From the NCBI GenBank assembly GCA_964106645.2, contig OZ067038.1: a DNA stretch of 64,000 bases. One strand, given 5' to 3'. The notes beneath the pieces are model-generated. The model made no database searches. It was not told the origin of the DNA and was given only the letters and a program-made list of their open reading frames with translations. Both the position numbers and the translations under genes were made by a program. This document shows positions 49,310-51,264 of the stretch, piece after piece. The stretch comes from Podarcis pityusensis. Taxonomy: Eukaryota. Positions within the stretch are counted from its first letter, which is position 1, and each line of letters begins with the position of its first letter.

Positions 49310-49395
49310 ACATTGTTGGAACAGCCCGTCCTGACGAGAAGGCCATCATGACCTATGTTTCTAGCTTCTACCACGCCTTCTCAGGAGCCCAGAAG
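49310..49395 (+). CDS. ACTN1: ACTN1 exon 8a ([29 protein letters not shown])
   Basis: tgacag|ACATT ... GAAG|gtatcg; 86 nt; phase 1 to 0; matches the canonical ACTN1 exon 8 peptide. Confidence 0.96.
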
Positions 49396-51178
49396 GTATC
49401 GCAGGATTCCAAGCTCCCTCCACACAGAGCACCTGGTCCTCTTGCTAATGTCCAAACCTTTTTTTCTTTCTCTCTCTCTCCTATCTAGCTACGGGCATCT
49501 TTATTATTATTTTTGGCAGAGTTGGCTTGTTGGCTCCGAATGGCTTTCTGTGTATTTATCATTTTGGGGGTGCAGATGGGGTCAAACACAATCCCACAGT
49601 CAGTGATGTAGTGCAGATCTGTACTTTGGTGCAAGTCAGCGGGTCACTCTCATGGCATCGGGAGCTCTGCTTTTATCCACAGGACACAAAGATCTCTCTC
49701 TCTCGAGGTGAATCTCGGGGGGGGGGGAAGTATTTTGCATAGTAATTTGTCATGCATAGTGATCCAGCATCATAACATTCTACATGCCAGCTAACCCATG
49801 CTGAATTGCTTTGCTGATCAGCAACAGTGCTGTGCGATTGAGCCTCCTTATTTTGCAAAAGAGCACAATTTTAAGAAATAAGGCCTGGATGCCGCAGAAC
49901 AGAAAATGTGCATTCTGTTTGCCAAATTCTCTGAAAACATTACTGACAGGATGTCCCAAACAGGAAGTTTCCACAGAGCATTGCAGTTTGATGAATCAAC
50001 TGCTCTTTGGTATCTGAGAACTCATCGTAGAGCAAATGGGTTGTGCAGTACAAGTCTCTGCTTGTTCACTCAGAAGTTAAGTCACTCTCAGTTCAGTAAG
50101 GTGTTCTCCCAAGTAAGTGTGTAAGTAGGCCAAAGCTTGGAAGTGGATCCAGATATCATGTCATTTCCCTCAAAAGTAGACTGAATGCTAACCTTTCACT
50201 AGCTACAGCTTAAGACAGTGGTAGATAGAAGTTGTGGAGCACCTACTTTTTTCTGGGATACTTGCAGAAAATGCTGAACCTGATGGTTCTAGTTAGGGTA
50301 CTCCTCATGTTCTTAAGCAATTGTGCATTATTAGATTATGCCTTAATTTTTAAGAGATCCTGCGCATGCATTCTTGCTTGGTGGGCCAGAAGGGGTCTGA
50401 TAGAAAGTAGACCATGCAATACTGAAGCCTTGCCTAAATGGACAGATATGCATGCCTGTGTCTTCTAAAGTGAAACAGGGAGCAGTATGATAATACTTCA
50501 GATGTAAACTGCATTTCTAGAACTCCCCTGTGACATGCCATTGTACCAGGCAAGGGGTTACTCCACATCTTTTTCCACTGCACACAGCTGAAGTTAAAAA
50601 AAAAGTCATCCGTTTTATAGATGGAATATCTGGTAGCTGTGCCCACAGCACAAGGGGAAGAGCTGTATGCTCAGAAAACGCACATGGGACAGCCCTAATA
50701 AGATGTCAAGCACTGGCACTGCAAGAACAGATCTTCTCTGCCTTGCATCTGGGTTTTGTCATGCCTTTTAACTTCTATATAGTGTCTTCAACAAATTTAG
50801 CTACTTTATTCCTGTATGTAGAATGGGCACATGGCACTGGCTGTTTACTCCCCCAGATAAAGCTAGATTTGCCCATCTGCAAGTGGGTTGAGGCTACTGA
50901 CTGTGGAGTTGTGTCAAAGCAGTGTGGACTAGGCTGGTTGCTTGGAAACCAAAGCTGAAAATGGGAGGTGGGAACGAGTGCCACAGGACTCCACAAAGCC
51001 AACCCTTCCGGTCACGTTCTGATCCGAATTCCCAGCTCTCCGCATGGAAATCTGTTTCGCCTGTCCTGCAATGCATGATGGGAAGTTTCCCCCTCTCTTA
51101 CCACCCATGACTGTTTTATTTTATTCTGTGTGCTGCTTCTTACTTTATCCTTTCAACCTCTTCTCCTTCTTTGCACAG

Positions 51179-51264
51179 ATATTATAGGCACGCTAAGGCC
51201 GGATGAGAAGGCCATTATGACCTATGTTTCATGTTACTACCACGCCTTCTCAGGTGCGCAGAAG
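51179..51264 (+). CDS. ACTN1: ACTN1 alternative mutually exclusive exon 8b ([29 protein letters not shown])
   Basis: Long pyrimidine tract then gcacag|ATATT ... GAAG|gtgaga; same length (86 nt) and phases as 8a; 67/86 nt and 25/29 aa identical; no stop in the actinin frame. Confidence 0.92.

What the first reader, a model, noticed from the sequence alone, without database searches (positions are those of the whole stretch)
49310..51264. Intact duplicated, mutually exclusive exon 8a/8b pair in the ACTN1 actin-binding domain
Seen: two 86-nt exons with identical phases, both with AG/GT ends. They differ at 19 nt: 10 codons synonymously, 4 non-synonymously (V>I, A>L, S>C, F>Y), with no indel or stop, which points to purifying selection. 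8b is absent from the ORF track. Established: 8a/8b splicing is known in ACTN2 and ACTN4, and the ACTN4 8b variant has the same A>L and S>C changes in the CH2 segment that carries the FSGS mutations (K255E, T259I, S262P) affecting actin affinity. As I recall, mammalian ACTN1 uses a single exon 8. Inference: this lizard ACTN1 keeps an ancestral actin-affinity switch that mammalian ACTN1 may have lost. The mechanism is not new to the family; its retention in this paralogue is the point to verify.
Basis: partly seen in the sequence, partly recalled or inferred. Interest (0 to 1): 0.85.

Follow-up and report, generated by a model that had tools for sequence, protein, structure and literature searches.

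The report
Ancient either/or exon 8 in ACTN1
This lizard's alpha-actinin-1 gene holds two intact alternative copies of exon 8, an old vertebrate feature already published for fish and annotated in lizards and birds, of which placental mammals keep only a broken remnant.

Summary
Window 49310-49395 (8a) and 51179-51264 (8b) are two 86-nt exons with AG/GT ends and the same phase. They differ at 19 nt: 10 synonymous and 4 non-synonymous codons (V>I, A>L, S>C, F>Y).

The gene is ACTN1: exon 10 is 100% identical to chicken smooth-muscle actinin.

The inference is supported, but it is neither lizard-specific nor new.
- An 8b exon with the same L/C/Y signature sits in ACTN1 of shark, bichir, gar, teleosts, coelacanth, frog, turtle, snakes, lizards and birds.
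- Isoforms joining exon 7 to 8b to exon 9 are already annotated, for example in Podarcis muralis and several birds.
- Abascal et al. [quoted passage not shown]

I looked at three placental ACTN1 loci (bat, rodent, cat). Each holds an 8b remnant with shared frame-breaking lesions, so the coding exon was lost before these lineages split. The remnant keeps its splice sites and is the best-conserved spot in its intron.

The scan's earlier notes on this genome hold similar either/or exons in other genes, not this one.

Verdict: real and functional, but already known. Interest is low.

The parts
47477..47558 (+). ACTN1 exon 7. It ends ...MLDAE plus a G that starts the Asp codon completed by either exon 8; the 5' splice site is AAG|gtaaag.
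   Evidence: Local tblastn of Podarcis ACTN1 P0274 gives 100% over 47477-47557. The exon end was read directly. The exon start is approximate.
49310..49395 (+). Exon 8a, 86 nt, the type used by all mammalian ACTN1 isoforms seen. It has a short pyrimidine tract and a weak 5' splice site (AAG|gtatcg).
   Evidence: The peptide is identical to the ACTN1 8a of birds and mammals.
49396..49460 (+). Intron block just after 8a, about 60 nt, conserved in lizard, cobra and bird. It holds a second GT at 49436, 40 nt downstream. Using that GT would make 8a 126 nt long and keep the frame if 8b followed.
   Evidence: Alignment, with window letters taken only from 49399 on. Bird RefSeq and cobra models use this path. 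No transcript evidence was obtained here.
51030..51178 (+). Conserved intron block before 8b. It holds a GCAUG/UGCAUG motif at 51072-51077 and a long pyrimidine tract (51146-51175) rich in UCUU/CUCUU, ending in cag.
   Evidence: Alignment. The motif, in the same sequence context, lies upstream of 8b or its remnant in all six amniote loci. The pyrimidine tract is nearly identical from lizard to mammals.
51179..51264 (+). Exon 8b, 86 nt, intact, with a consensus 5' splice site (AAG|gtgaga). It encodes [29 protein letters not shown].
   Evidence: It is 86/86 nt identical to cobra 8b and differs from bird 8b at 4 synonymous sites. The same peptide occurs in annotated 7-8b-9 isoforms of Podarcis and birds.
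57195..57287 (+). Exon 9, 93 nt ([10 protein letters not shown]...LASD), joined to whichever exon 8 is used.
   Evidence: Read one base out of frame it hits a stop after 13 codons.

Best explanation
The two exons are the ancestral mutually exclusive exon 8a/8b pair of the alpha-actinin family, kept intact in this lizard's ACTN1.

Each mRNA takes one copy. Both encode the last helix region of the second calponin-homology domain (CH2) of the actin-binding head. They differ at four residues (V>I, A>L, S>C, F>Y). In ACTN4 this segment carries the FSGS kidney-disease mutations that change actin affinity.

The reading frame enforces exclusivity, because each exon is 86 nt:
- If both are included, the frame hits a TAG at the third codon of 8b.
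- If both are skipped, the frame hits a stop 13 codons into exon 9.
Such mRNAs would be removed by nonsense-mediated decay.

The choice between copies is probably regulated (inferred, not shown). 8b has the stronger splice sites but is preceded by a long UCUU-rich tract, a PTB-type repressor site, and by a deeply conserved GCAUG, an RBFOX-type site. This suggests 8b is held off by default and released in particular tissues.

The expected outcome is an ACTN1 variant with altered opening of the CH1-CH2 pair and altered actin affinity. This is inferred by analogy with ACTN4 8b.
For: **Anatomy and differences.**

**Frame logic.**. The same stop in exon 9, followed by decay, was shown experimentally for ACTN2 when exon 8 is skipped (PMC7782589).

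**Gene identity.**

**Orthologous 8b exons.** They occur in ACTN1 of shark, bichir, gar, teleosts, coelacanth, frog, turtle, squamates and birds, all with the L6/C19/Y20 signature.

**Annotated isoforms.** Eighteen ACTN1 gene models in my sample read exon 7, then 8b, then exon 9 directly. They include Podarcis muralis P0274 and RefSeq Pogoniulus X2, P0273.

**Purifying selection.** There is no non-synonymous change between lizard and bird 8b, against 4 synonymous ones. Lizard and cobra are 86/86 nt identical.

**Conserved flanking intron blocks.** These include the GCAUG motif.

**Literature.** The pair dates to the bilaterian ancestor and is present in ACTN1 of fugu, gar and coelacanth (PMC4494069). 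ACTN4 8b changes N>G, A>L and S>C next to the FSGS residues and alters cell behaviour (PMC4539665; bioRxiv 10.1101/2024.10.05.616792).
Against: There is no transcript evidence from this species.

The exon is also unusually conserved at synonymous sites (lizard identical to cobra). Part of the constraint is therefore on the RNA, not the protein.

In mammals the same element is conserved without coding. Conservation alone therefore does not prove that the exon is translated.

The regulators and the effect on actin binding are inferred, not measured. The Ensembl and RefSeq isoforms in relatives are computational annotations whose read support I could not inspect.
Confidence: 0.85

Rival explanations
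1. 8b is conserved in the lizard as a non-coding element: a decoy or poison exon, or a splicing regulator. This is what it appears to be in placental mammals. On this reading it is never translated as part of ACTN1.
For: In bat, rodent and cat the orthologous element is non-coding, yet it is the conservation peak of its intron. The lizard and cobra exons are identical even at synonymous sites, which shows RNA-level constraint.
Against: The reading frame is intact with the exact 86-nt length. All 4 lizard-bird differences are synonymous. The peptide signature holds from sharks to birds. 7-8b-9 isoforms are annotated in a lizard and several birds. The mammalian remnants, by contrast, gathered stops and indels quickly once coding use ended.
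Confidence: 0.05
2. 8b is a recent, lineage-specific duplicate of this gene's own exon 8.
For: Only the tandem arrangement and the equal length.
Against: 8a and 8b are 79% identical. No intron similarity remains. The lizard 8b is 95-100% identical to bird and cobra 8b at the same position in the gene. Mammals carry an orthologous remnant.
Confidence: 0.01
3. Besides the either/or products, sauropsid ACTN1 makes a third product. In it, 8a is lengthened by 40 nt through the conserved downstream GT (49436) and spliced to 8b. That keeps the frame and inserts 13 residues plus a second copy of the helix.
For: Bird RefSeq isoforms (P0166-P0169) and the cobra model (P0162) use exactly this path. The 40 nt and the GT are conserved among lizard, cobra and bird and stay open in frame.
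Against: Gene predictors guided by protein similarity tend to include both homologous exons whenever an in-frame path exists. The second GT sits in a poor splice-site context (CTG|gtcctc). A duplicated helix would probably disturb the CH2 fold. The conservation can be explained by an intronic splicing element.
Confidence: 0.1

Closest known systems
ACTN4 exon 8a/8b (the 'SpEx8' or Va variant; Honda et al. 2004, reviewed in PMC4539665)
   Same: It has the same position in the gene and the same CH2 segment, and the two copies exclude each other. The downstream copy carries the same A>L and S>C changes.
   Different: ACTN4 8b also changes N>G and keeps F where ACTN1 8b has Y. ACTN1 8b also has V>I. 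The ACTN4 pair is intact and used in mammals.
[quoted passage not shown]
   Same: It is the same gene and the same exon pair, with the same L/C/Y signature in the downstream copy. That paper already states that human and mouse ACTN1 lack it.
   Different: The paper does not name reptiles or birds. Fish copies differ at one to four positions (for example S for G, K for A near the end).
Annotated ACTN1 isoforms with 8b in Podarcis muralis (UniProt A0A670I1D9) and in birds (for example RefSeq Pogoniulus pusillus isoform X2)
   Same: The 8b peptide is identical and is joined directly to exons 7 and 9.
   Different: These are other species, and the annotation is computational. I could not see its read support.
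ACTN2 exon 8a/8b, regulated by QKI (PMC7782589)
   Same: It has the same architecture and the same frame logic: skipping gives a stop in exon 9 and mRNA decay.
   Different: The downstream copy has P-K where ACTN1 and ACTN4 have L-R. The regulators of the ACTN1 pair are unknown.
ACTN1 exon 19 NM/SM pair in the EF-hand region (Waites 1992; Southby 1999; PMC6613909)
   Same: It is the same gene and is also a mutually exclusive pair. It is repressed through pyrimidine-rich and CAC elements.
   Different: It affects a different domain (calcium binding), lies outside this window, and is retained in mammals.

Membership tests
ACTN1 orthologue (non-muscle/smooth-muscle alpha-actinin-1) | Sequence closer to ACTN1 than to ACTN4, ACTN2 or ACTN3 across the exons | tested here: met
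   Exon 10 is 77/77 identical to chicken smooth-muscle actinin 1SJJ and lower to ACTN2 chains. Summed exon identity is 88-90% to ACTN1 of lizard, bird and bat, 80-82% to ACTN4 and 75% to ACTN2.
Alpha-actinin exon 8a/8b mutually exclusive homologous exon pair | Two tandem homologous exons of equal length and phase between exons 7 and 9, each with its own splice sites | tested here: met
Alpha-actinin exon 8a/8b mutually exclusive homologous exon pair | A length that is not a multiple of three, so that taking both or neither breaks the frame | tested here: met
   Each exon is 86 nt. There is a TAG at codon 3 of 8b in the shifted frame and a stop after 13 codons of exon 9 if both are skipped.
Alpha-actinin exon 8a/8b mutually exclusive homologous exon pair | The downstream copy is orthologous to the 8b of other vertebrates and is not a recent duplicate | tested here: met
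   It is 95-100% identical in nucleotides to bird and cobra 8b against 79% to 8a. The signature is shared from shark to birds and with ACTN4 8b.
Alpha-actinin exon 8a/8b mutually exclusive homologous exon pair | Transcripts that carry one copy or the other | not testable with these tools
The only support is annotated 7-8b-9 isoforms in related species.
Alpha-actinin exon 8a/8b mutually exclusive homologous exon pair | The two copies give different actin-binding behaviour | not tested
   This is known only for ACTN4 from the literature. No assay or model was run for ACTN1.

The most novel reading that the evidence does not exclude
Placental mammals did not simply lose ACTN1 exon 8b. They converted the old either/or coding exon into a conserved stop-containing 'poison' exon that lowers ACTN1 output when spliced in. 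The lizard exon shows the coding state it came from. That would be a documented case of a mutually exclusive exon turning into a decay switch.
Probability: 0.4. Interest if true: 0.5.

Novelty: already known. Interest (0 to 1): 0.22.

Why it matters
The exon pair swaps four residues in the part of alpha-actinin that controls how tightly it binds actin. It is therefore a plausible tissue-specific tuning device, and non-mammalian animals could be used to study it in ACTN1.

As a discovery it adds little. The pair is published for fish and coelacanth ACTN1 and is already annotated in a lizard and in birds.

The modest new value lies in two points:
- **Timing of the loss.** The coding exon was lost before the bat, rodent and cat lineages split.
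- **The mammalian remnant.** It is under strong nucleotide constraint, which could link an old alternative exon to regulated mRNA decay.

Tried and rejected
**Read-level test.** No junction evidence exists. Local alignments started at 49399, or used a copy with those places masked.

**Joined transcript.** Exons were searched singly by reference. Full-length comparisons used database proteins.

**RNA looping.** A C-run 25 nt after exon 7 (47583-47598) and a G-run after 8a (49717-49732) could pair and loop out 8a (pair I8). Neither run exists in the cobra, so this was dropped as a conserved mechanism.

**Other regulatory motifs.** QKI, MBNL, CELF and NOVA counts gave nothing above what chance would give. 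UGCAUG overall is not enriched either; only the one conserved copy before 8b is notable.

**Lek et al. 2010 (Mol Biol Evol).** This paper on actinin gene structure is not held in the library, so its statements on ACTN1 exon 8 could not be checked.

**Failed locus look-ups.** Four models were not on record: Myotis, Varanus, Tupaia and Aquarana. No marsupial, monotreme, crocodilian, turtle or frog locus was obtained.

**Human sequences.** Human ACTN1 proteins that came back were excluded from every later step. No human contig was fetched.

**Tree.** A tree of the 29-residue segments was not built. The signal is too short, so nucleotide identities and shared lesions were used instead.

Full report
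**Observation**

The window was read at 49200-51400 and the two candidate exons were compared by script.

Exon 8a is 49310-49395 and exon 8b is 51179-51264. Both are 86 nt. Both follow ...acag and precede gt. Both begin with two bases that complete an Asp codon started by the last G of exon 7 (47558).

They differ at 19 nt. Ten codons differ synonymously and four non-synonymously (V>I, A>L, S>C, F>Y). There is no indel or stop.

A repeat search finds the similarity only across the exon plus ACAG and GT. None remains in the introns, which points to an old duplication.

**Gene identity**

The mechanical ORF list shows actinin exons 2 to 14 on the + strand.

The exon 10 peptide is 77/77 identical to PDB 1SJJ, chicken smooth-muscle alpha-actinin, and less similar to ACTN2 chains.

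Local tblastn against the window was run with places 49360-49398 masked. Summed identity was 88-90% for ACTN1 of lizard, bird and bat, 80-82% for ACTN4 and 75% for ACTN2. The gene is the ACTN1 orthologue.

**What is known**

Abascal, Tress and Valencia 2015 (PMC4494069) describe this pair of mutually exclusive homologous exons. They date it to the bilaterian ancestor. [quoted passage not shown]

ACTN4 8b changes N>G, A>L and S>C next to the FSGS residues (PMC4539665) and enhances cell migration (bioRxiv 10.1101/2024.10.05.616792).

In ACTN2 the pair is controlled by QKI. Skipping exon 8 gives a premature stop in exon 9 and mRNA decay (PMC7782589).

**Distribution of ACTN1 8b**

Instead I searched with database proteins: P0001 residues 95-160 and Aquila ACTN1 P0166 residues 269-360. 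The returned proteins were classified by pattern.

An 8b-type exon with L at position 6, C at 19 and Y at 20 lies in an ACTN1 backbone in each of these groups:
- a shark (Cetorhinus);
- reedfish, gar and many teleosts;
- coelacanth;
- a frog (Aquarana) and a turtle (Terrapene);
- snakes and lizards (Ophiophagus, Varanus, Sphaerodactylus, Phrynosoma, Podarcis);
- many birds.

Eighteen ACTN1 models join exon 7 directly to 8b and then to exon 9. They include Podarcis muralis (P0274, UniProt A0A670I1D9), Pavo, Buteo, Taeniopygia, Falco and RefSeq Pogoniulus isoform X2. The squamate and most bird peptides are identical to the window's.

**Genomic comparison**

Five ACTN1 loci were fetched: king cobra L001, a passerine L002, Pteropus L003, Grammomys L004 and Herpailurus L005.

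In cobra and bird, 8a and 8b lie in the same order between exons 7 and 9. The lizard 8b is 86/86 nt identical to the cobra exon. It differs from the bird exon at four sites, all synonymous. It is only 79% identical to 8a. This rejects a recent duplication and shows strong purifying selection.

**Mammals**

All of about 45 non-human mammalian ACTN1 isoforms returned carry the 8a type.

In bat, rodent and cat, about 1.1-1.3 kb after 8a, there is a remnant of 85, 84 and 81 nt:
- It is 79-87% identical to sauropsid 8b (83-87% to the lizard and cobra exon) and only 64-69% to 8a.
- All three remnants share the same lesions: a 1-nt deletion near the start, an ATT ATG to ATG TGA change and an added A. 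Rodent and cat each add an indel of their own.
- In the exon-7 phase each reads a stop at codon 3.

The coding exon therefore died before these three lineages split.

The remnant nevertheless keeps cag at its 3' splice site, the pyrimidine tract and AAG|gtgagc. In a three-way alignment of the 7.5-kb intron it is the single conservation peak. Identity there is 91-94%, against a rodent background of about 25-65%. That is as high as or higher than in the coding 8a between the same species.

A preprint lists ACTN1 among genes with a conserved poison exon but does not say which exon. Whether it is this element is open.

**How the pair works in the lizard**

*Shown.* The frame rules out both double inclusion (TAG at codon 3 of 8b) and double skipping (stop after 13 codons of exon 9).

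*Shown.* 8b has the stronger signals: a long pyrimidine tract and a GTGAGA 5' splice site, against a short tract and GTATCG for 8a.

*Shown.* About 60 nt after 8a and about 150 nt before 8b are conserved among lizard, cobra and bird. A GCAUG in the same sequence context lies before 8b or its remnant in all six amniote loci.

*Inferred.* The UCUU-rich tract and the upstream GCAUG are the kinds of sites through which PTB and RBFOX proteins repress exons. 8b is therefore probably off by default and released in some tissues.

*Inferred by analogy with ACTN4.* The four residue changes alter the closed-to-open balance of the two CH domains, and so actin affinity.

**Unresolved**

Bird RefSeq isoforms and the cobra model contain both copies. 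They are linked by 13 residues that come from a 40-nt extension of 8a to a second GT. The window has the same GT at 49436, and the stretch before it is open in frame. This may be a predictor artefact or a minor real product.

**Limits**

Nothing is known about expression in this species.

Local work used positions from 49399 on, or a masked copy.

Human ACTN1 proteins that appeared were set aside unused, and no human contig was fetched.

The scan's earlier notes on this genome hold no entry for this locus. They do hold similar either/or exons in LAMA5 and dynein.

**Verdict**

The feature is an ancient, widely retained and already annotated part of ACTN1 outside mammals. Interest is low. The conserved, disabled remnant in placental mammals is the one point that may deserve a separate look.

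Noticed in passing
L003:72113-72197, L004:71247-71330, L005:72732-72812 (bat, rodent and cat ACTN1 intron 8): A remnant of exon 8b with shared stops and frame-breaking indels. It keeps intact cag and gtgagc splice sites and its pyrimidine tract. At 91-94% identity it is the sharpest conservation peak in the 7.5-kb intron. It may be the conserved ACTN1 poison exon mentioned, without coordinates, in bioRxiv 10.1101/2025.04.06.646893.
   Followed up: partly
window 49396-49460; L001 and L002 just after exon 8a: About 60 nt after 8a are nearly identical in lizard, cobra and bird. They stay open in frame up to a second GT 40 nt downstream (49436). Bird RefSeq isoforms X5/X6/X8 and the cobra model use this GT to include both 8a and 8b in frame.
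   Followed up: partly
window 51072-51077 and the matching places in L001-L005: A UGCAUG within the context CCTGTC...GCATGATGGG lies 107-288 nt before 8b or its remnant in all six amniote loci. It is a candidate RBFOX site.
   Followed up: partly
window 47583-47598 and 49717-49732: A run of 13 C shortly after exon 7 and a run of 11 G after exon 8a are complementary and could loop out 8a. Neither run is present in the cobra, so this is probably incidental.
   Followed up: yes
L003:67343-67423 and 69495-69575: Exon 7 appears twice, 2.1 kb apart, in the Pteropus assembly. The locus also holds 5.6 kb of N. This is probably an assembly duplication.
   Followed up: no
window 51179-51264 vs L001:12514-12599: Lizard and cobra 8b are identical at all 86 nt, synonymous sites included. 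This suggests constraint on the RNA, such as splicing enhancers or structure, beyond the protein code.
   Followed up: no
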